Positions 45,386 to 53,658 are shown, counted from the first letter of the stretch. The stretch: DNA of 64,000 nucleotides from Ascidiella aspersa (GCA_963924565.1 OZ004613.1:21266001-21330000), one strand, 5' to 3'. Notes: generated from the sequence alone by a model not told the origin. Made by a program: numbers and translations.

Positions 45386-46899
45386 GTTTATTAACGGTGG
45401 ACTGTTAACTTTTAAAAATGTAATATTTTGATGAAAAATACCTGCATCACATCAAGGTTAAAAATGTGTTAATCTGATATCCGATTGTGCCAGCAAGAAG
45501 GCAGTTCAAGGGAATGAAAAGGTTATCAGGTGTTGTGTTAGCGCATAGCCATCAGCCACTGCGGAAAGTATGGCAAGTTCACCCGGGATTTTTTTTAACC
45601 TTTTAAAAGTCCACCCTAAAAAAAATCTTAACTGCAACCCAATTATGTGAAACACCTGTGCACCCTTAATTATCGCATTGGTATATACGTTTAAAGTGTA
45701 ACGTATGCAATAAAGAGTGCATTGGGAAATGATTAAGTCCACCTGGAAAATTGAAAGTGCACCCGGTAACACAGTTTTTTTTAGGTGGTGCACCCATGGG
45801 TCTTGTCAAGATTTGTCATATTTTCCAGGCTGGGCCATCACTCATTAGTGCCCCAAATTAGTTGTTTTGTTAGGCTGACAAATCACGAGAAGTCGAAAGT
45901 TGGTGATTTAATCTTTATCACGTAAAGTTGGCATATTTCTGGAGGCCTAATGGTGCTTATTTAAATTTGGGGATGCAGATGGCCGAGGTGGCTATTTTGA
46001 CAAACACTTGTAAAAAATCTGGCGCTGTCTAGAATCCTACCACATTTTCGTATCATGTTAATGTCACGTTGTGGATTATCCCTTGCGCAGTTTCACTAGG
46101 GTTCCTCTTTTTCCCGGAACTTTTTTACTTCAGAAGAAATTATATGACTTTTCGTGTTGGTGTTTTTTAAACGCAAAATTAATCGTAGTTGTACTCACTA
46201 GTCTGAAAAGTATGGCAGATCTCGTGGGTGCATGGCTGAAAAAATCCGGGTGATCGGGTGCAACAAAGGTAAAAGAAGTGCTCCTCGGGAGCAATTTTAA
46301 ATTCTAGGGTGCACTTTGTGATTTTCCTATGTACTCTGTATTTCATATTAAACTGTAAACGTATGCCGCATAAGTGTTTTACATATTTGGGGTGTAGTTC
46401 AGATTATTTTAGAGGTGCAAATTTAAAATACCTTTAAAAAATGTTTATTTTAGTCCCGTTTCTCTCTGCAAAAACAACAGGGGGCTTGGTGCAGTCTCGC
46501 AGTGACCTGTTTATGATTCCCATACAATAATAGGTAAAATAATTTTAATGAATTTTTCCGCTGGTAAGCGCAAATAAAGCAACTCGGGCAACGACTTTAA
46601 TAGGTTTGGTAATATTTTTTTTTCCTCATATTAATTAAAAACGACAAGTTTTTTTCAGTTTTGCTATGTTGCCGAAAAACCGAAATTATAAAAAGAAAAA
46701 TTCCTGAGATTCGGGATCGTTGTTTAGCGGGTAATCCCGGGAATTTCCCGTCGAAACATTTTTAGAAGGCGCCAACTTAAAAATCGAAGTGCAATGCGTT
46801 CAGCTGCGAAAGTTTTTGTGAAATTTAAAAAATAGAGAGATTGTAATTTGCTACGTAATTGAAAAAATCTCAGGTGCGCACCTGACACAGAATAAAGAC

Positions 46900-47790
46900 A
46901 CCAAAAGCTAGTCAGCAAATAATTTCTGGCAGATTATTTCAACGTCAAAATAAACTTAATTACGTATATTTTTTTCGAAAAATAATTTTACCACCGTCTT
47001 GAGAATGGACTATGTTTCTTAGATTTTGAAAAAAAAAATTAATATTCGAAAAAATATTAATATTCAATATTAATATTCGCCATAAAAAATAAATTAAAAA
47101 TTTCATCCCAGGTTGAAACTAATTTTTTTAAGTAGCGCAGGAGTAAACCTTTCCAATGATGCCTCGCTTGCTATAAATTTGTTGGGGAGTAAGGGTTTAA
47201 TTCGGCAAAAACCGATATTAATATTCATGACATATCGCGATAATTTTTGAAAGTCTCTAGTACCCTTATTAAAAATCACAATCGAACGAAACTTTCACAC
47301 GTTCATTTTCAAAGGCGTAGTTTGCCAAAGAACAAAAAAATATAAAAAATTTCAAAGTTTTAAAAATTTCATATTAATCTATTAATAGTCCCGATATCGC
47401 GATTTTTCACCCAAAAAACATCCGACCACAATAGGCACAAATAATTTTCATCCCACCATAAAATCAAACACATTGCATAGACATTGATCTCACCTTTCCA
47501 ATGATGCCTCGCTTGCTATAAATTTGTTGGGGAGTAAGGGTTTAATTCGGCAAAAACCGATATTAATATTCATGACATATCGCGATAATTTTTGAAAGTC
47601 TCTAGTACCCTTATTAAAAATCACAATCGAACGAAACTTTCACACGTTCATTTTCAAAGGCGTAGTTTGCCAAAGAACAAAAAAATTTAAAAAATTTCAA
47701 AGTTTTAAAAATTTCATATTAATCTATTACCGGTGATAGTCGCGATATCGCGATTTTTTACCCCAAAAGGGGTAGTTTGTCAAAGAACAA
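46900..47790 (+). repeat. Left TIR: 247-bp outer domain plus ~1.7 copies of a 345-bp unit
   Basis: Unit start acctttccaatgatg at 47147 and 47492; the second copy decays after 47729. Confidence 0.95.
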
Positions 47791-47975
47791 ATGCTACTTA
47801 TTGAAGATAGTTTCCACAAATATAAAAGATATATTACACTTATTTCCACGCAACAACAGAAATAAGCAAACATACTTTTAAATTTGGGTTATTTTTTGTT
47901 GTTCATTTTTTACCAATTTAAAAGTTTACAAAAAATATTCTTACCAAATATTTGTTCATCATGTGTTGTTGTTTT

Positions 47976-50900
47976 TTAACATTGTTTGCAAAACCAGGGT
48001 TCGTCGTTGTTATCAATTGCCCCTTGAGGAACGTGTGTTTGAACACATTCCCTGTGGAACCATTCCTTACAACTGCTGCATTCTATTAAGAAAAGCGCTT
48101 TGTTATCGGCTAATCTACAATTACAGTAAATGCTAGTGTGTATAGCTAAAGGTTTTCTTGATAAACCTGGTCTATTCCTACGCGTAAAAAATGGAGCAAC
48201 AGAACGATTTAAAACTATTTTCTGAATGTCACTGCGCAATGTTGCCTCTTTAAATATTACCTGCTCTGGTTTGATGCCGGATAGTATTGCAACTGCAAAA
48301 GCTATTGCAAAAGGACCACAATTGGAGCTTCCCTTCTGTTGGCATACCTTGGGAAATTCGAATTTAATGTTTTTAAAATTTTTTAAGTAGACAAGTTTGG
48401 ACAACTTGAATAGATCGTCCGAGTTATATTCGCTATAATAACTGTCGTATAATTGTATGGAATTACTCTCCGTTGAAAAAATGTTGGACGCCGTTACCCA
48501 ATGGTTTGAATGAACATTTATAATTTGAACAAATTTTCCGACAGAACAATTTACTGAAGGAAAATGAAACGGTGTTTCATAAGCATGAATGCTTTGTAAC
48601 CCTCCAATTTGAGGAAATTGTGTTGCCATTATATGCATTACCGAATCAATATGCTTATCGCTTAGCCATGTGTCTTTTGACAATAATTCAAGGTGATCAC
48701 TTTGATTCATGGTAAAACTGGTTTGATATTTTACACCACAACAACGGCGTCCCCAGGAACTAACAGGCAAATTGGAATTACAATCGTGGCCCTTATTCGT
48801 GTTTTTGATTGTCGATTTTCCGCGTTTGTTCGGACTAGAGCTTCTCAAACCCTTTGAAGGAGCTTGAAGATACTTCCCAATAGTCCTATCTGGCCCTGTG
48901 GTTCTTGGCTTCTTAGCCCAGCTTTCCTCTTCCTGTGGCTGGACGACTGCTCTTTTACGTTTGGACTTTTGCGCCAGCCTTATATTGTCTCTGAACTCTC
49001 GAACTAAAGCGACGTTCTGATCGTTGTACACTTGTGCAAATTCGGCAACATTACAAAATTTCTTACCAAAGCACCGCGTTCTTTTTAACTCCTGCTGACT
49101 CTTTTCCATGACCCCTTGTGTCCTATTATCTTTAGATAAGTTTTGATCTGCACTCCTAGACATCTTATTGAAAAACTCGGATGCGCGTTTATACGAATCG
49201 TCCGTTCCATGCCGGCCCAAGTCGTCTAGCATCAAACCTGTCCAAAGTGCAATTTTTGGCAAACAATTGACAGCAAATTTTTCAATAAATTCTAGACAAT
49301 AAAATTCGTTGTGATAATTTGCCTTTGTATCCTTGACTGCCTTTCCTGCTCTGCTGAGGGTTTTACTAAAATAGCTGACAAATGGGTTTGTTGAAATTGG
49401 GGTTTGGTCATTTTCAAGTGCGCTCTCCCCCGCATCCCTTTCGGCAAGAACAAATTGTTGAGAAATATCATCTTTGCGTTCAATTTTGGATTTTAACCAA
49501 TTCCAACTTATTTTTACCTGCATGTCATTTTTAGATGTAAATAAAATTACCATGTGATACAAAATATTGTTTATCGCATCAAGAGATTCCGCGCACATCA
49601 ACAAACCCATCACATACATTGCCTCTTGCCTTCTTTTAGGAAGAAGGCCACAAAGGCTTTTCATATTCTTCATCGTGTGACTGCCACACAAATGAAGAAA
49701 GGGCTTGCTAAAAGTCCTATCAGTTGCTTTTCCTGACACCACATTAAAACAACGGTCTAAATAGGCTTCCAAATCCTCATTCATATAAACTGACAAAAGC
49801 GATCGAATAATTGCCATGCTTCCATCGCAAATGATTTGACGCACAACGGTTTTTCCAACTAACTTATTTTCGTCCGAATAAAACATTTTAAAAAATTTTG
49901 AAATGGAAACGATATTGTGACTGTTGGTCACGTATGTCACAACAGCCAAAGGGGCTTTTCCCTTGTTTGGGTGGCGCACAGATATTTCATACGCGTAATA
50001 GGGCGCTTTTTTTCCCGAAGCTTTAATGACTCCCCCTGTTGCGTCAATGTACATAATATCCGTTTTAGTTCTTTCGTGAAAAATGCGTAAATTATCCAAC
50101 GACCAAAGCATAAGGCTACTTGGAATGCTTGAATGAAATCGAATGGTCCCTGGTAACGCGGACTTGCTTTCTGCACATTTCTCTGCCTGCGCAACCTGCA
50201 TTGCCTTTATCGCGTCGGTCTCGTTGCAGGAAGGAAGTTTTATTTTATTTCCCTCTGCTCTCGCTTGTCTCAAAACGTTATAAATAGGCGCGTTATCGCG
50301 ATTGCCTGACTCTTCCACTTCGTCGTCCAACTTGTCTAAATTTTTTAAGTTAAAGCGGCTGGGCAAAATGTTAGCCAACTTTTCCTGCATGGCTTTTCTT
50401 CTATCACCCTTCAACCTGCATGCAACGATATCGCCTTTTCTGTGCTTTACATCGCCTGTGTAGTTCACCTCAAATGTTTTGTCGGTATTGTTTCGCAAAT
50501 CGATACTAGCTTTACAAGTGCAAAATTCGAACGTACAGTACGCTTTACAATTAAAAGCACGGGTTTTATCATTTTTTTGATTCCAGAAATGTCCTGCAAA
50601 GCCAAAACTACAGAACGGGTTACTTTTTTTAAGTGCTTGCCGAAACACGTCAACCCAATTTTTATTTGTAAAGTTTCGACCAACGACAGATTTTTTTAAC
50701 GGAACCCAATCGGATTCAGAAAGTTCAAACGTATGTTGTTTTAATATATCTTTTTTAGGGACCCAAAACTCGCAACTACTATTTTCAGACAACGCTGACT
50801 CGTTTCCGTCACAAGACGACACATTGCCAATATAACCACTTTCATAAAACACGGGTATAGCACAAAGCAAATTATCACTGATATCAACATCCGAAGCATT

Positions 50901-51659
50901 GCTGCTGCTGCCACAACTGCCCTCGTACAACACAGCGCCATTTGTACTACAACATTCCACAACGGACAACCGCTCCTGACCCAGCACCTTGTTAAATTCA
51001 TCACCATGTTTAGCAAAAAAACCCTTAAGCTTACGAACTTCACCTCTAATTTGTTTTTTTGAAACATTTTTGGCTTTCAATTTACCTAACAAAGTTATCC
51101 AGCTACTACCACACGCAGGATCGAAATCGAACGATTCAATGGCGACTTTTATCGACGTAATTTTGTTATCTCGTGTAACGTCGTTACTCTCATTTTTCAA
51201 AACAACGTCTAATTTATCCATGCGAGGAAAACTATCACTGATGTCAAAATCCGAAGCATTGCTGCTGCTGCCACAACTGCCCTCGTACAACACAGCGCCA
51301 TTTGTACTACAACATTCCACAACGGACAACCGCTCCTGACCCAGCACCTTGTTAAATTCATCACCATGTTTAGCAAAAAAACCCTTAAGCTTACGAACTT
51401 CATCTCTAATTTGTTTTTTTGTAAATTTTTTTGTTTTTAGTTTACCTAACAAAGTTATCCAGCTACTACCACACGCAGGATCGAAATCGAACGATTCAAT
51501 GGCGACCTTTATCGACTTTATCTTATCATCATTCGGTACTGTACTAAGGGCACCGCCATAAATTCGTTGAATCTCTCTGCAAAAATAATAATCTGTTAAA
51601 GCACTCGTGGGTTCGAGCTCATTGTTCGATGGAACCGAGGTCGTTGCTCCAACGGTCCT
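47976..51659 (-). CDS. MULE transposase fused to a Ulp1/C48 peptidase and a PHD finger (large terminal exon)
   Basis: The open frame extends 69 codons upstream of the listed TTG start to a splice acceptor at 51660; first in-frame ATG is at 51221 (1081 aa). Putative Zn/DNA-binding region CKAYCTFEFCTC..VKH; DDE core YIDATGG, IICDGSMAII, CGSH (CxxH), RTQGVMEKSQQELKR; Ulp1-like WLSDKHID, NHWVT, LYDS, QQKGSSNCGPFAIAFA; terminal PHD CNC..ECSSCKEWFHREC..WFCKQC. Confidence 0.9.
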   Translation of the reverse strand, partial: RTVGATTSVPSNNELEPTSALTDYYFCREIQRIYGGALSTVPNDDKIKSIKVAIESFDFDPACGSSWITLLGKLKTKKFTKKQIRDEVRKLKGFFAKHGDEFNKVLGQERLSVVECCSTNGAVLYEGSCGSSSNASDFDISDSFPRMDKLDVVLKNESNDVTRDNKITSIKVAIESFDFDPACGSSWITLLGKLKAKNVSKKQIRGEVRKLKGFFAKHGDEFNKVLGQERLSVVECCSTNGAVLYEGSCGSSSNASDVDISDNLLCAIPVFYESGYIGNVSSCDGNESALSENSSCEFWVPKKDILKQHTFELSESDWVPLKKSVVGRNFTNKNWVDVFRQALKKSNPFCSFGFAGHFWNQKNDKTRAFNCKAYCTFEFCTCKASIDLRNNTDKTFEVNYTGDVKHRKGDIVACRLKGDRRKAMQEKLANILPSRFNLKNLDKLDDEVEESGNRDNAPIYNVLRQARAEGNKIKLPSCNETDAIKAMQVAQAEKCAESKSALPGTIRFHSSIPSSLMLWSLDNLRIFHERTKTDIMYIDATGGVIKASGKKAPYYAYEISVRHPNKGKAPLAVVTYVTNSHNIVSISKFFKMFYSDENKLVGKTVVRQIICDGSMAIIRSLLSVYMNEDLEAYLDRCFNVVSGKATDRTFSKPFLHLCGSHTMKNMKSLCGLLPKRRQEAMYVMGLLMCAESLDAINNILYHMVILFTSKNDMQVKISWNWLKSKIERKDDISQQFVLAERDAGESALENDQTPISTNPFVSYFSKTLSRAGKAVKDTKANYHNEFYCLEFIEKFAVNCLPKIALWTGLMLDDLGRHGTDDSYKRASEFFNKMSRSADQNLSKDNRTQGVMEKSQQELKRTRCFGKKFCNVAEFAQVYNDQNVALVREFRDNIRLAQKSKRKRAVVQPQEEESWAKKPRTTGPDRTIGKYLQAPSKGLRSSSPNKRGKSTIKNTNKGHDCNSNLPVSSWGRRCCGVKYQTSFTMNQSDHLELLSKDTWLSDKHIDSVMHIMATQFPQIGGLQSIHAYETPFHFPSVNCSVGKFVQIINVHSNHWVTASNIFSTESNSIQLYDSYYSEYNSDDLFKLSKLVYLKNFKNIKFEFPKVCQQKGSSNCGPFAIAFAVAILSGIKPEQVIFKEATLRSDIQKIVLNRSVAPFFTRRNRPGLSRKPLAIHTSIYCNCRLADNKALFLIECSSCKEWFHRECVQTHVPQGAIDNNDEPWFCKQC
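50874..51515 (-). repeat. In-frame tandem duplication (360-bp period) of a ~94-aa N-terminal module of the transposase
   Basis: 50874-51155 and 51234-51515 are near-identical; both encode IKVAIESFDFDPACGSSWITLLGKLK...NGAVLYEGSCGSSSNASD.DISD. Confidence 0.95.
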
Positions 51660-52430
51660 CTACAAGAAGACAGAGTTAGACGATCCAATCTAAACTACTA
51701 AAGTATTGAGGACAATACAGAGTTGAACCACAGCACTTACCACAGGCTTGGAGTCCTCCTGTTTTAGCCCGCTGGTCGAAGGAGCACATGTCCGTGCTCC
51801 AACGGTACTCTACAAGAAGACAGAGTTAGACGATCCAATCTAAACTACTAAAGTATTGAGGACAATATAGAGTTGAACCACAGCACTTACCACAGGCTTG
51901 GAGTCCTCCTGTTTTAGCCCGCTGGTCGAAGGAGCACATGTCCGTGCTCCAACGGTCCTCTACAAGAAGACAGAGTTAGACGATCCAATCTAAACTACTA
52001 AAGTATTGAGGACAATATAGAGTTGAACCACAGCACTTACCACAGGCTTGGAGTCCTCCTATTTTAGCCCGCTGGTCGAAGGAGCACATGTCCGTGCTCC
52101 AACGGTACTCTACAAGAAGACAGAGTTAGACGATCCAATCTAAACTACTAAAGTATTGAGGACAATATAGAGTTGAACCACAGCACTTACCACAGGCTTG
52201 GAGTCCTCCTGTTTTAGCCCGCTGGTCGAAGGAGCACATGTCCGTGCTTCAACGGTCCTCTACAAGAAGACAGAGTTAGACGATCCAATCTAAACTACTA
52301 AAGTATTGAGGACAATATAGAGTTGAACCACAGCACTTACCACAGGCTTGGAGTCCTCCTGTTTTAGCCCGCTGGTCGAAGGAGCACATGTCCGTGCTCC
52401 AACGGTCCTCTACAAAAAAATATAGTTAGA
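51646..52430 (-). repeat. 150-bp tandem array, 5 copies; each is an 81-nt intron plus a 69-nt phase-0 exon
   Basis: Units start at 51661, 51811, 51961, 52111, 52261. On the minus strand each has acceptor tcttcttgtag (tttttgtag at the first) and donor gtaagt. Exons 52409-52341, 52259-52191, 52109-52041, 51959-51891 and 51809-51741 encode (R/S)TVGARTCAPSTSGLKQEDSKPV with point variants. Confidence 0.9.
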
Positions 52431-52444
52431 TGACTCAGCACAGA

Positions 52445-53470
52445 TATGTGATGAATATTAAATATCGGTTTTTGCCGAATTAAACCCTTACTCCCCAACA
52501 AATTTATAGCAAGCGAGGCATCATTGGAAAGGTGAGATCAATGTCTATGCAATGTGTTTGATTTTATGGTGGGATGAAAATTATTTGTGCCTATTGTGGT
52601 CGGATGTTTTTTGGGTGAAAAATCGCGATATCGGGACTATTAATAGATTAATATGAAATTTTTAAAACTTTGAAATTTTTTAAATTTTTTTGTTCTTTGG
52701 CAAACTACGCCTTTGAAAATGAACGTGTGAAAGTTTCGTTCGATTGTGATTTTTAATAAGGGTACTAGAGACTTTCAAAAATTATCGCGATATGTCATGA
52801 ATATTAATATCGGTTTTTGCCGAATTAAACCCTTACTCCCCAACAAATTTATAGCAAGCGAGGCATCATTGGAAAGGTGAGATCAATGTCTATGCAATGT
52901 GTTTGATTTTATGGTGGGATGAAAATTATTTGTGCCTATTGTGGTCGGATGTTTTTTGGGTGAAAAATCGCGATATCGGGACTATTAATAGATTAATATG
53001 AAATTTTTAAAACTTTGAAATTTTTTAAATTTTTTTGTTCTTTGGCAAACTACGCCTTTGAAAATGAACGTGTGAAAGTTTCGTTCGATTGTGATTTTTA
53101 ATAAGGGTACTAGAGACTTTCAAAAATTATCGCGATATGTCATGAATATTAATATCGGTTTTTGCCGAATTAAACCCTTACTCCCCAACAAATTTATAGC
53201 AAGCGAGGCATCATTGGAAAGGTTTACTCCTGCGCTACTTAAAAAAATTAGTTTCAACCTGGGATGAAATTTTTAATTTATTTTTTATGGCGAATATTAA
53301 TATTGAATATTAATATTTTTTCGAATATTAATTTTTTTTTTCAAAATCTAAGAAACATAGTCCATTCTCAAGACGGTGGTAAAATTATTTTTCGAAAAAA
53401 ATATACGTAATTAAGTTTATTTTGACGTTGAAATAATCTGCCAGAAATTATTTGCTGACTAGCTTTTGGT
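52445..53470 (-). repeat. Right TIR: outer domain plus ~2.25 copies of the 345-bp unit
   Basis: Unit boundaries at 53223, 52878 and 52533; the third copy is truncated near 52445. Confidence 0.95.
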
Positions 53471-53607
53471 AATAAAGACTGGTCATTAGTAAATGATAAG
53501 GGTTATTTTTACCAAAAATAAATATCACGTTAGCGCCAGCCGCCAGCCGAACTCTTATAATTATTCGTGTGTGACCAAACTCTATAGAAAACATATTTTA
53601 TTTTTTT

Positions 53608-53658
53608 GTTCGGCCCACTGATCTCTATGAAATTTTCATAGAGATCAGTGGTTCGGCC
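53608..53658. mobile_element. 35-bp TIR-only palindrome flanked by an 8-bp TSD (probable P-type excision footprint)
   Basis: gttcggcc [cactgatctctatgaaa t tttcatagagatcagtg] gttcggcc; perfect 17-bp arms at 53616-53632 and 53634-53650. Confidence 0.75.

What the first reader, a model, noticed from the sequence alone, without database searches (positions are those of the whole stretch)
46900..53470. Very young, apparently coding-competent Foldback-type MULE with a transposase-Ulp1-PHD fusion
Seen: perfect 9-bp TSD, ~830-bp TIRs differing at about one base, an uninterrupted 3.68-kb exon, and intact D-D-CxxH-E, protease H/D/Q/C and PHD residues. Established: 9-bp TSDs and the DDE+CxxH core mark the Mutator superfamily; Foldback-like modular TIRs and accessory Ulp1 or PHD domains are known from some animal Mutator (Phantom-type) elements, so the parts are not new individually. 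Inference: this is a recent, possibly active element. Combining a chromatin reader (PHD) with a deSUMOylase could counter SUMO-dependent transposon silencing or steer insertion toward promoters.
Basis: partly seen in the sequence, partly recalled or inferred. Interest (0 to 1): 0.8.

Follow-up and report, generated by a model that had tools for sequence, protein, structure and literature searches.

The report
Rehavkus-like foldback transposon in sea squirt
This is a recently inserted copy of a foldback DNA transposon of the Mutator/Rehavkus kind in a sea-squirt genome; its transposase is fused to a SUMO-type protease and a PHD finger, a build already seen in other animals, so it is a good specimen but not a new kind of element.

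Summary
Window 46900-53470 is a 6,571-bp element with a perfect 9-bp duplication (AATAAAGAC), 830-bp inverted arms with one mismatch, and a 1,227-codon open frame.

- **Protein:** a WRKY-type zinc finger, a DDE/CxxH RNase-H core, a Ulp1 protease with intact H-D-Q-C, and a complete PHD finger.
- **Fold:** no Pfam transposase model hits the core. A confident model (pLDDT 89) is closest to the IS256-family transposase ISCth4 (Z 11.3), which is Mutator-related.
- **Classification:** conserved blocks, 9-bp duplications, repeat-built arms, a subterminal minisatellite and the PHD match published Rehavkus elements (Mutator superfamily), not Phantom.
- **Not new:** the core-Ulp1-PHD build recurs in Styela and medaka, and Ulp1 plus PHD in animal Mutator transposases was published in 2010.
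- **Age:** arm identity is no clock, because private changes sit in both arms. The nearest copy differs by 0.86%. Reads from one DNA run suggest the insertion is absent or heterozygous there.
- **Coding competence:** unproven. There is no in-frame ATG before codon 147, and one upstream cassette carries a stop.

The anti-silencing and targeting idea is untested. Another agent of this scan called a giant relative elsewhere in this genome Rehavkus-like. Verdict: new member of a known kind.

The parts
46891..46899 (.). Left copy of the 9-bp target-site duplication AATAAAGAC
46900..47729 (+). Left terminal inverted repeat, 830 bp, starting ACCAAAAGCTAGTCAGC. It contains about 2.3 copies of a 345-bp subrepeat (47147-47729).
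47976..51659 (-). Long open frame of 1,227 codons plus stop. The first in-frame ATG is codon 147 (51219-51221).
47979..48134 (-). PHD finger (C4HC3). Closest solved relatives are PHF2, PHF8, DIDO1 and BPTF.
48225..48707 (-). Ulp1/SENP-type (C48) cysteine protease domain with H, D, Q and C at 48501-48503, 48444-48446, 48336-48338 and 48318-48320
48942..50165 (-). RNase-H-fold DDE transposase core with an alpha-helical insertion. D 50043-50045, D 49824-49826, CxxH 49677-49688, E 49104-49106.
50433..50750 (-). N-terminal four-stranded zinc finger of the WRKY/GCM1 type, the likely DNA-binding domain
50869..51528 (-). 360-bp tandem duplication (94% identical) inside the N-terminal part of the frame. 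The 83% subfamily also has it.
51645..52430 (-). Subterminal minisatellite, 150 bp x 5.2. Each unit is a 69-nt phase-0 segment bounded by AG and GTAAGT. The unit at 52041-52109 has an in-frame TAG.
52641..53470 (-). Right terminal inverted repeat, 830 bp, with one mismatch to the left arm (53028 against 47342). The 345-bp subrepeats continue inward to 52443. A TATAAA lies about 85 nt upstream of the first cassette.
53471..53479 (.). Right copy of the 9-bp target-site duplication AATAAAGAC

Best explanation
A full-length copy of a Rehavkus-like foldback DNA transposon (Mutator/MuDR superfamily) in an ascidian genome.

Shown:
- Its one long gene encodes a WRKY-type zinc finger, a DDE/CxxH RNase-H transposase, a Ulp1/SENP-type cysteine protease and a C-terminal PHD finger.

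Inferred mechanism:
- The zinc finger binds the repeat-built arms.
- The DDE core cuts the element out and pastes it with a 9-bp staggered cut.
- The protease and PHD finger are accessory modules. They have been kept by selection in active lineages and act on SUMO-like modifiers and on histone H3 tails near the transposition complex.

Status of this copy:
- It is recent and probably not fixed.
- Whether it can still make protein is open.
For: Element structure and family:
- TIR and TSD anatomy.
- Seven further paired copies have perfect 9-bp TSDs. Sizes run from 0.8 to 9.8 kb, as expected for autonomous copies plus deletion derivatives.
- At least 42 arm-end matches and many protein-coding copies are in the genome. 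Intact frames exist at 99%, 84%, 83% (two copies) and 45% (two copies) identity.

Transposase core:
- A profile of the core finds 2,705 relatives.
- D, D, C, H and E are invariant or nearly so.
- The AF2 model has pLDDT 89.4.
- Its best structural matches are ISCth4 of the IS256 family (Foldseek E 1e-4, probability 1.0; VIA Z 11.3 over 244 residues), then P element (Z 9.9) and Hermes (Z 9.2).
- The N-terminal domain matches WRKY and AFT2 zinc fingers.

Rehavkus match:
- Published Rehavkus sequences share the same ordered blocks: DATGS, Y.Y, PV..M.S..H, D.S.A...FN...YL, LC.AH.MKN, N.YC, PLW[ST], TN..E..F..LK.
- The published Rehavkus description also fits: 9-bp TSD, long arms with tandem repeats, a subterminal minisatellite, a PHD finger.

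Accessory domains:
- The C-terminal profile hits Ulp1 (1EUV) at 5e-11 and SENP1 at 7e-10.
- dN/dS between subfamilies is 0.15 for the core, 0.21 for Ulp1 and 0.51 for PHD.
- The same core-C48-PHD order is in Styela clava and Oryzias latipes proteins.
Against: - No Pfam transposase model (MULE, Transposase_mut, FLYWCH) hits the protein.
- A profile search of solved-structure sequences finds nothing for the core.
- The Rehavkus match was judged by eye on a published alignment, without a statistic.
- Structural Z-scores for IS256, P and hAT lie within about 2 units of each other.
- The minisatellite lies upstream of the gene. The published description puts it before the 3' TIR.
- No start codon was found for the conserved N-terminal part, and one cassette has a stop.
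- RNA coverage is very low, 59 reads, and cannot be assigned to this copy.
Confidence: 0.82

Rival explanations
1. It is a Phantom-type MULE: an animal Mutator subclass with a FLYWCH finger and a canonical MULE domain.
For: It has a 9-bp TSD and foldback-like arms, and some Phantom elements have such arms. Phantom is reported from tunicates. The N-terminal finger has the WRKY/GCM1 fold to which FLYWCH belongs.
Against: There is no Pfam FLYWCH or MULE hit at E up to 10 for this protein or for the 13 relatives scanned, whereas Phantom proteins are defined through those hits. The conserved blocks match the Rehavkus rows of the published alignment.
Confidence: 0.06
2. It belongs to the Zisupton superfamily (zinc finger plus SUMO-protease transposons of fish and other chordates), not to Mutator.
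For: The architecture is a zinc finger, a transposase and a Ulp1 domain. Close relatives occur in teleosts (Oryzias, Mugilogobius) and ascidians. From memory, the Zisupton paper reports urochordate members.
Against: Zisupton makes 8-bp TSDs; this family makes 9 bp in eight copies. No Pfam hit of any kind falls on the core, so the KDZ model did not fire either. The blocks match Rehavkus.
Confidence: 0.08
3. This copy is a dead element: structurally complete but unable to make transposase, and mobilised, if at all, only by other copies.
For: There is no in-frame ATG in the first 146 codons, and no ATG exon in a compatible phase anywhere between the gene and the right end. There is an in-frame TAG in cassette 52041-52109. 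It differs from its nearest sister at 11 residues, all within the first 913 codons of the frame, eight of them in the zinc-finger/core part.
Against: Translation could start at Met147 and still give every recognised domain. The 3.68-kb frame is unbroken and all catalytic residues are intact. The 99% sister copy has the same 5' layout. Some RNA reads cover the frame.
Confidence: 0.35
4. It is a domesticated host gene (a chromatin factor derived from a transposase), not a mobile element.
For: There is purifying selection on all domains. Named homologues are annotated as ordinary genes in Styela and Oryzias.
Against: It has perfect TIRs and a TSD. There are dozens of copies at different sites, each with its own 9-bp TSD, plus deletion derivatives. 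Many different flanks are seen in reads at the arm end (loose ends at 46899/46900).
Confidence: 0.02

Closest known systems
Rehavkus group of the Mutator (MuDR) superfamily (Repbase: Rehavkus-1_HR, -1_TC, -3_TC, -2_NVi, -1_DY)
   Same: 9-bp TSD; long arms (26-412 bp published, 830 bp here) carrying tandem repeats; a subterminal minisatellite; a single ORF with a PHD finger; the same ordered transposase blocks.
   Different: Rehavkus is published from insects and an annelid only; this one is from a tunicate. The sources I could read do not mention a Ulp1 protease domain between transposase and PHD for Rehavkus. The minisatellite here lies on the 5' side of the gene.
Mutator transposases with Ulp1 and PHD domains in hydra and lancelet (Bao, Kapitonov and Jurka 2010, PMC2836005)
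   Same: A transposase carrying a C-terminal Ulp1 catalytic domain with a PHD finger, in animals. The authors already proposed a role for Ulp1 in transposition.
   Different: Those sequences are in Repbase only and could not be compared here. The host phylum differs.
Drosophila Foldback and other foldback-type elements (Galileo, Tetris, Tm1)
   Same: Long modular inverted arms built of tandem subrepeats. Tm1, like this element, makes 9-bp TSDs, and variable repeat numbers between copies are reported for the Rehavkus foldback elements and seen here between the two closest copies.
   Different: 'Foldback' is a structural class, not a lineage. Galileo carries a P-type transposase and Tm1 a Phantom-type one.
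IS256-family transposase ISCth4 (PDB 6XG8/6XGX)
   Same: Best structural match of the catalytic core. It has an RNase-H DDE fold with an inserted helical domain.
   Different: 10-14% sequence identity; bacterial; no zinc finger, protease or PHD.
Zisupton superfamily
   Same: Zinc finger plus transposase plus Ulp1 SUMO protease; present in fish.
   Different: 8-bp TSD against 9 bp here. No direct sequence comparison was possible.

Membership tests
Mutator (MuDR/MULE) superfamily, broad sense | Target-site duplication of 9 bp (range 8-11) | tested here: met
   Perfect 9 bp here and in seven other paired copies
Mutator (MuDR/MULE) superfamily, broad sense | DDE transposase of the RNase-H fold with a C/DxxH motif and a helical insertion between the second D and the E | tested here: met
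   Model with pLDDT 89.4. D after strand 1, D after strand 4, CxxH after strand 5, E in a late helix. All are conserved in 22-43 relatives.
Mutator (MuDR/MULE) superfamily, broad sense | Significant sequence match to the Pfam MULE or Transposase_mut models | tested here: not met
   No hit at E up to 10 on the core, and none in the 13 relatives scanned
Mutator (MuDR/MULE) superfamily, broad sense | Catalytic core closest to the IS256 family among solved transposases | tested here: met
   ISCth4 is first in Foldseek (E 1e-4, probability 1.0) and in VIA-align (Z 11.3, against 9.9 for P element and 9.2 for Hermes). The margin is modest.
Mutator (MuDR/MULE) superfamily, broad sense | N-terminal WRKY/GCM1-type zinc finger | tested here: met
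   AFT2 Z 5.2, WRKY33 Z 4.8, AtWRKY18 Foldseek probability 0.98. Conserved C, C, C and H.
Rehavkus group | Transposase sequence blocks shared with published Rehavkus transposases | tested here: met
   Eight ordered blocks agree with the six Rehavkus rows of the alignment in PMC6446971. This was judged by eye. No E-value could be computed because those sequences could not be handed to a tool.
Rehavkus group | Long inverted arms carrying tandem repeats, plus a subterminal minisatellite | tested here: met
   830-bp arms with 345-bp subrepeats and a 150-bp x 5.2 array next to the right arm. Published description. The position relative to the gene differs.
Rehavkus group | PHD finger in the transposase protein | tested here: met
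   Pfam PHD 2.9e-6, 27.7 bits against a cut-off of 24
Phantom subclass of Mutator | FLYWCH zinc finger and MULE domain recognisable by Pfam | tested here: not met
   Neither model hits. Definition taken.
Zisupton superfamily | 8-bp target-site duplication | tested here: not met
   9 bp in eight copies.
Zisupton superfamily | Sequence similarity to the Zisupton transposase | not testable with these tools
   The paper and its sequences are not held. No Pfam model fired on the core.
Ulp1/SENP (peptidase C48) | Catalytic His, Asp and Cys with the oxyanion Gln, in the family's order | tested here: met
   H, D, Q and C are invariant in 7 sequences and align to yeast Ulp1. The profile hits 1EUV at 5e-11 and SENP1 at 7e-10. 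The single sequence scores 20.6 bits in Pfam, just under the 20.7 cut-off.
Ulp1/SENP (peptidase C48) | Cleavage of SUMO or a related modifier | not testable with these tools
   Needs an enzyme assay
H3K4me3-reading PHD fingers (PHF2/PHF8/BPTF type) | Aromatic cage residues | tested here: inconclusive
   The closest solved PHDs are PHF2, PHF8, DIDO1 and BPTF. Which residues form the cage is from memory, not from a tool. On that reading the first Tyr and the Trp are kept. The second Tyr (PY or AY in relatives) is Asp in this subfamily (LADN).

The most novel reading that the evidence does not exclude
The Ulp1 protease and PHD finger are a counter-silencing and targeting module shared by a large clade of Rehavkus-like transposases; other members add USP-type deubiquitinases.

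- The PHD would bring the transposition complex to H3K4-methylated, active chromatin.
- The protease would strip SUMO from the host's silencing machinery, or from the transposase itself.
- In this subfamily the repeated N-terminal cassettes, each with an LKQE site, would serve as SUMO acceptors that the protease regulates.
Probability: 0.1. Interest if true: 0.7.

Novelty: new member of a known kind. Interest (0 to 1): 0.33.

Why it matters
**What it adds**
- It extends the little-studied Rehavkus branch of Mutator transposons to tunicates.
- The transposase-Ulp1-PHD build is old, widespread (ascidians and a teleost here; hydra and lancelet in print) and under purifying selection.
- The family has young, near-intact copies in a chordate, so it could serve for three experiments: testing why DNA transposons carry ubiquitin-like proteases and chromatin readers, studying how long inverted arms stay identical within a copy, and possibly building a transposon tool for ascidians.

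**What it does not do**
- It does not open a new category. Each part, and the combination of parts, has been reported before.

Tried and rejected
**Searches that found nothing on the core**
- Pfam scans of the whole protein and of the core gave no transposase family.
- The word-index homologue search gave only 4-5 relatives, even with a 22-sequence profile.
- A profile search of PDB sequences with the core found nothing.
- The first structure model, from 8 sequences, was poor (pLDDT 59.6) and gave only weak matches. A 43-sequence alignment fixed this.

**Start codon**
- I scanned the minus strand from the right end to the big exon for any ATG-started segment ending at a phase-0 GT. Only non-credible candidates appeared.
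- Low dN/dS in the pre-ATG codons 41-146 (0.29) looked at first like proof of coding. I rejected it as independent evidence. That stretch is copy 1 of a 360-bp duplication whose two copies resemble each other more than their counterparts in the other subfamily, so conversion from the coding copy could produce the same signal.

**Empty site**
- Neither flank has a second full-length match in the assembly.
- The left flank holds a 230-bp dispersed repeat, which blurred the read evidence.

**SUMO-site reading of the cassettes**
- LKQE is present in this subfamily only. The 83% subfamily has VQKVD or VKKVD.

**Tools and papers not available**
- The Phantom, Zisupton and Yuan-Wessler papers are not held.

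- I did not pass the Rehavkus sequences from the paper's supplement to any tool, because they are not stored session sequences and would have had to be de-gapped.
Each piece was read on its own.


Full report
**1. What is there**

Window 46900-53470 is bounded by two 830-nt inverted arms (46900-47729 and 52641-53470). It is flanked on both sides by AATAAAGAC (46891-46899 and 53471-53479).

- The arms differ at one position, 47342 against 53028.
- Each arm holds about 2.3 copies of a 345-bp subrepeat. A separate 150-bp x 5.2 array (51645-52430) lies just inside the right arm.
- On the minus strand an open frame of 1,227 codons runs from 51659 to 47979 and ends in a stop.

**2. It is one member of a mobile family**

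The window is C7:21266001-21330000 of a 308.6-Mb assembly.

The closest named homologues are from Styela clava and Phallusia mammillata. The host is not Styela clava itself, since the best match to the Styela protein in this genome is 42%.
- The first 247 nt of the arm have at least 42 matches at 82-100% identity.
- Seven other paired copies, 0.8 to 9.8 kb long, each have their own perfect 9-bp duplication. An eighth, older pair has 7 of 9.
- The protein has intact-frame copies at 99% (C8:12352238), 84%, 83% (two copies) and 45% (two copies), plus many broken ones.
- This is the usual picture of a DNA transposon family: autonomous copies, deletion derivatives and several subfamilies.

**3. The protein**

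*C-terminal domains*
- Pfam sees only the C-terminal PHD finger (2.9e-6) and, just under its cut-off, Peptidase_C48 (20.6 against 20.7 bits). Nothing hits the 570-residue middle even at E 10.
- A profile of the C-terminal region from seven family members hits yeast Ulp1 (1EUV, 5e-11) and SENP1 (7e-10).
- The catalytic His(-Trp), Asp, Gln and Cys are invariant and aligned.
- The PHD finger has all eight zinc ligands. Among solved structures it is closest to PHF2, PHF8, DIDO1 and BPTF. From established knowledge these are readers of H3K4me3.
- Which residues form their aromatic cage is also from memory, not from a tool. On that reading one cage tyrosine, present as PY or AY in relatives, is Asp in this subfamily. 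Reader specificity is therefore uncertain for this copy.

*Core*
- A profile of eight sequences (alignment A2) was run against 1.84 billion representative proteins. It found 2,705 relatives, 1,253 of them below 1e-10.
- With 43 of these as the alignment, AlphaFold2 gave a confident model (pLDDT 89.4, pTM 0.78).
- The secondary-structure order is that of an RNase-H DDE transposase. The first Asp (IDATG) follows strand 1 and the second (ICDGS) follows strand 4. CxxH (LCGSH) follows strand 5. A helical insertion comes next, and the Glu (VMEKSQQELK) sits in a late helix.
- These residues are invariant or nearly so in 22 to 43 sequences at 20-46% identity to this one.
- Foldseek ranks the IS256-family transposase ISCth4 first (E 1e-4, probability 1.0).
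- VIA-align over 48,161 chains gives ISCth4 Z 11.3 (244 residues, rmsd 5.4), P element Z 9.9 and Hermes Z 9.2, then retroviral integrases near Z 7.5.
- IS256 is the bacterial kin of Mutator (established knowledge).
- The N-terminal 110 residues of the model form a four-stranded zinc finger that matches AFT2 and WRKY domains (Z 4.6-5.2; Foldseek probability 0.98). From established knowledge this is the DNA-binding fold of MULE, FAR1 and FLYWCH proteins.

**4. Which Mutator branch**

- Phantom elements are defined in the literature by Pfam-detectable FLYWCH and MULE domains. Neither is detectable here.
- The Mutator survey of Dupeyron et al. (PMC6446971) uses as outgroup the Rehavkus group. [quoted passage not shown]
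- A Tribolium study describes Rehavkus as foldback transposons with long inverted termini and variable numbers of subterminal tandem repeats that evolve in concert.
- The supplementary alignment of that survey shows the six Rehavkus transposase cores. They share, in the same order, the blocks that define the present family:
  - [LI]x[LF]DATGS
  - Y.Y
  - PV..M.S..H....I
  - V.D.S.A...A....FN......YL..CF
  - LC.AH.MKN
  - N.YC
  - LP.W[ST]
  - TN..E..F..LK
- I take this as membership of the Rehavkus group, which Repbase and Yuan and Wessler place inside MuDR/MULE.
- The match was judged by eye.
- Zisupton, the other Ulp1-bearing chordate superfamily, makes 8-bp duplications and could not be compared directly. 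I keep it as a minor rival.

**5. The fusion is not new**

- The Styela clava protein LOC144431350 (1,023 aa, 43% identical in the core) and a protein from a Logan assembly have the same core-Ulp1-PHD order.
- So does Oryzias latipes LOC105353816 (C48 at 818-945, PHD at 962-1013).
- A sea-cucumber relative has core plus C48.
- Longer relatives of 1,500-2,100 aa add a USP-type deubiquitinase, with or without C48 and PHD.
[quoted passage not shown] They listed Ulp1-bearing Mutator elements in hydra and lancelet and suggested that Ulp1 takes part in transposition.
- Between the subfamilies of this genome, dN/dS is 0.15 for finger plus core, 0.23 for the linker, 0.21 for Ulp1 and 0.51 for the short PHD. 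The accessory domains are therefore kept by selection in the lineages that transpose.

**6. Age**

  - Within copies the first 600 nt of the two arms are 98.2-99.8% identical. Between copies they are 96.5-99.3% identical.
  - Two changes found in no other copy of the assembly sit in both arms of this copy: 46983 T, and 47121 A (the latter shared only with one distant copy).
  - So either the arms are homogenised within an element or the parent lineage is unsampled. In both cases arm identity does not date the insertion.
- The nearest copy (C8) is 99.14% identical over 4,988 nt of internal sequence (39 mismatches, 2 gaps). It has more 345-bp subrepeats, which accounts for its 9.75 kb.
- Reads come from the raw-read DNA run X10.
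  - Unique-flank depth is about 9.
  - The assembly's letter at flank position 46791 is seen in 2 of 9 reads.
  - The private arm letters are seen in 1 of 67 reads (46983) and 2 of 80 reads (47121). About 18 would be expected if the insertion were homozygous.
  - This suggests the insertion is absent or heterozygous in that sample, so it is not fixed.
  - Counts are small. The left flank contains a 230-bp dispersed repeat. No read across an empty site was listed. I treat this as a hint only.
- The assembly holds no second haplotype of the site.

**7. Coding competence**

- The long frame has no ATG before codon 147 (51219-51221).
- Upstream, each 150-bp repeat unit is a 69-nt segment in phase 0 bounded by a pyrimidine-rich AG and by GTAAGT. 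It encodes RTVGARTCAPSTSGLKQEDSKPV. The same 69-nt layout exists in the 83% subfamily, so the cassettes look like real small exons.
- Three points weigh against a complete upstream reading:
  - no cassette has an in-frame ATG;
  - no ATG exon in a compatible phase exists anywhere up to the right end;
  - the cassette at 52041-52109 has an in-frame TAG in this copy.
- One 45% copy (L044) does begin with an ATG ahead of its own N-terminal peptide repeats.
- RNA run X11 gave only 59 reads at 97% likeness or better, with no splice joints, and none assignable to this copy.
- Translation from Met147 would still include every recognised domain. The copy may be functional, but this is not shown.
Each piece was read on its own.

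**8. Mechanism**

*Shown*
- The anatomy of a cut-and-paste element.
- A DDE/CxxH RNase-H core and a WRKY-type finger.
- A Ulp1 catalytic tetrad and a complete PHD finger.
- Selection on all of these.

*Inferred from family knowledge*
- The finger binds repeated sites in the arms.
- The core excises the element. The CxxH motif is shared with hAT, P and MULE enzymes, which, from memory, excise through a hairpin on flanking DNA. The core then integrates with a 9-bp stagger.

*Speculative*
- The PHD tethers the complex to H3K4-methylated chromatin.
- The protease removes SUMO from silencing factors, from repair factors or from the transposase.
- Nothing here tests this. The LKQE SUMO-consensus in the cassettes is not conserved in the sister subfamily.

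**9. Verdict**

- This is a well-preserved, recent Rehavkus-like Mutator element: a new member of a known kind.
- Another agent of this scan reached a Rehavkus-like reading for a giant relative elsewhere in this genome. I saw the same giant frames.

Noticed in passing
window 46983 and 47121, mirrored in the right arm near 53387 and 53249: Substitutions private to this copy are present in both inverted arms. Within-copy arm identity (98.2-99.8%) exceeds between-copy identity (96.5-99.3%) in five copies. This points to arm-to-arm homogenisation in long-TIR elements.
   Followed up: partly
window 52041-52109 (minus strand): The third of five 69-nt cassettes in the 150-bp array carries an in-frame TAG (LK*ED instead of LKQED). 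A frame running through all cassettes would be broken in this copy.
   Followed up: partly
window 46530-46760: A dispersed repeat of about 230 bp (SINE- or MITE-like) has at least 40 copies at 82-88% identity across the genome. It lies 139 bp from the insertion site.
   Followed up: no
window 53615-53651: A 36-bp palindrome in the right flank matches itself on both strands. It has similar copies on C1, C2, C3 and C4. Another first-stage finding also noted it.
   Followed up: no
G000 C8:25934496-25936118, C1:16771633-16773255, C8:2494073-2495002, C4:11073164-11074093: Distant relatives of the same transposase core (about 30% identity to the Styela protein) lie in open frames of 1,662-2,850 codons. 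Relatives of similar size in public data carry USP plus Ulp1 plus PHD.
   Followed up: partly
window 47979-48920 compared with 48921-50777 (minus strand): Divergence between subfamilies falls towards the 3' end: dS is 0.65 in the core, 0.39 in Ulp1 and 0.12 in PHD. The 99% sister copy has no difference at all in the last 314 codons. This suggests recombination or conversion between subfamilies.
   Followed up: no
L043:3906-4800 and L044:7900-8722 (45% subfamily): The N-terminal parts of the 45% subfamily are in-frame tandem repeats of Lys/Ala-rich peptides (KAKEANPKAGKALVVKAT... and AKAPEAKTVGRTAVVKTVGRAAG...). N-terminal peptide repeats therefore recur in the family with unrelated sequences.
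   Followed up: no
window 47896: Four RNA reads match up to 47896, which is 80 nt past the stop codon, and then continue into unrelated sequence with full agreement. They probably come from a transcribed deletion derivative or a splice variant of another copy.
   Followed up: no
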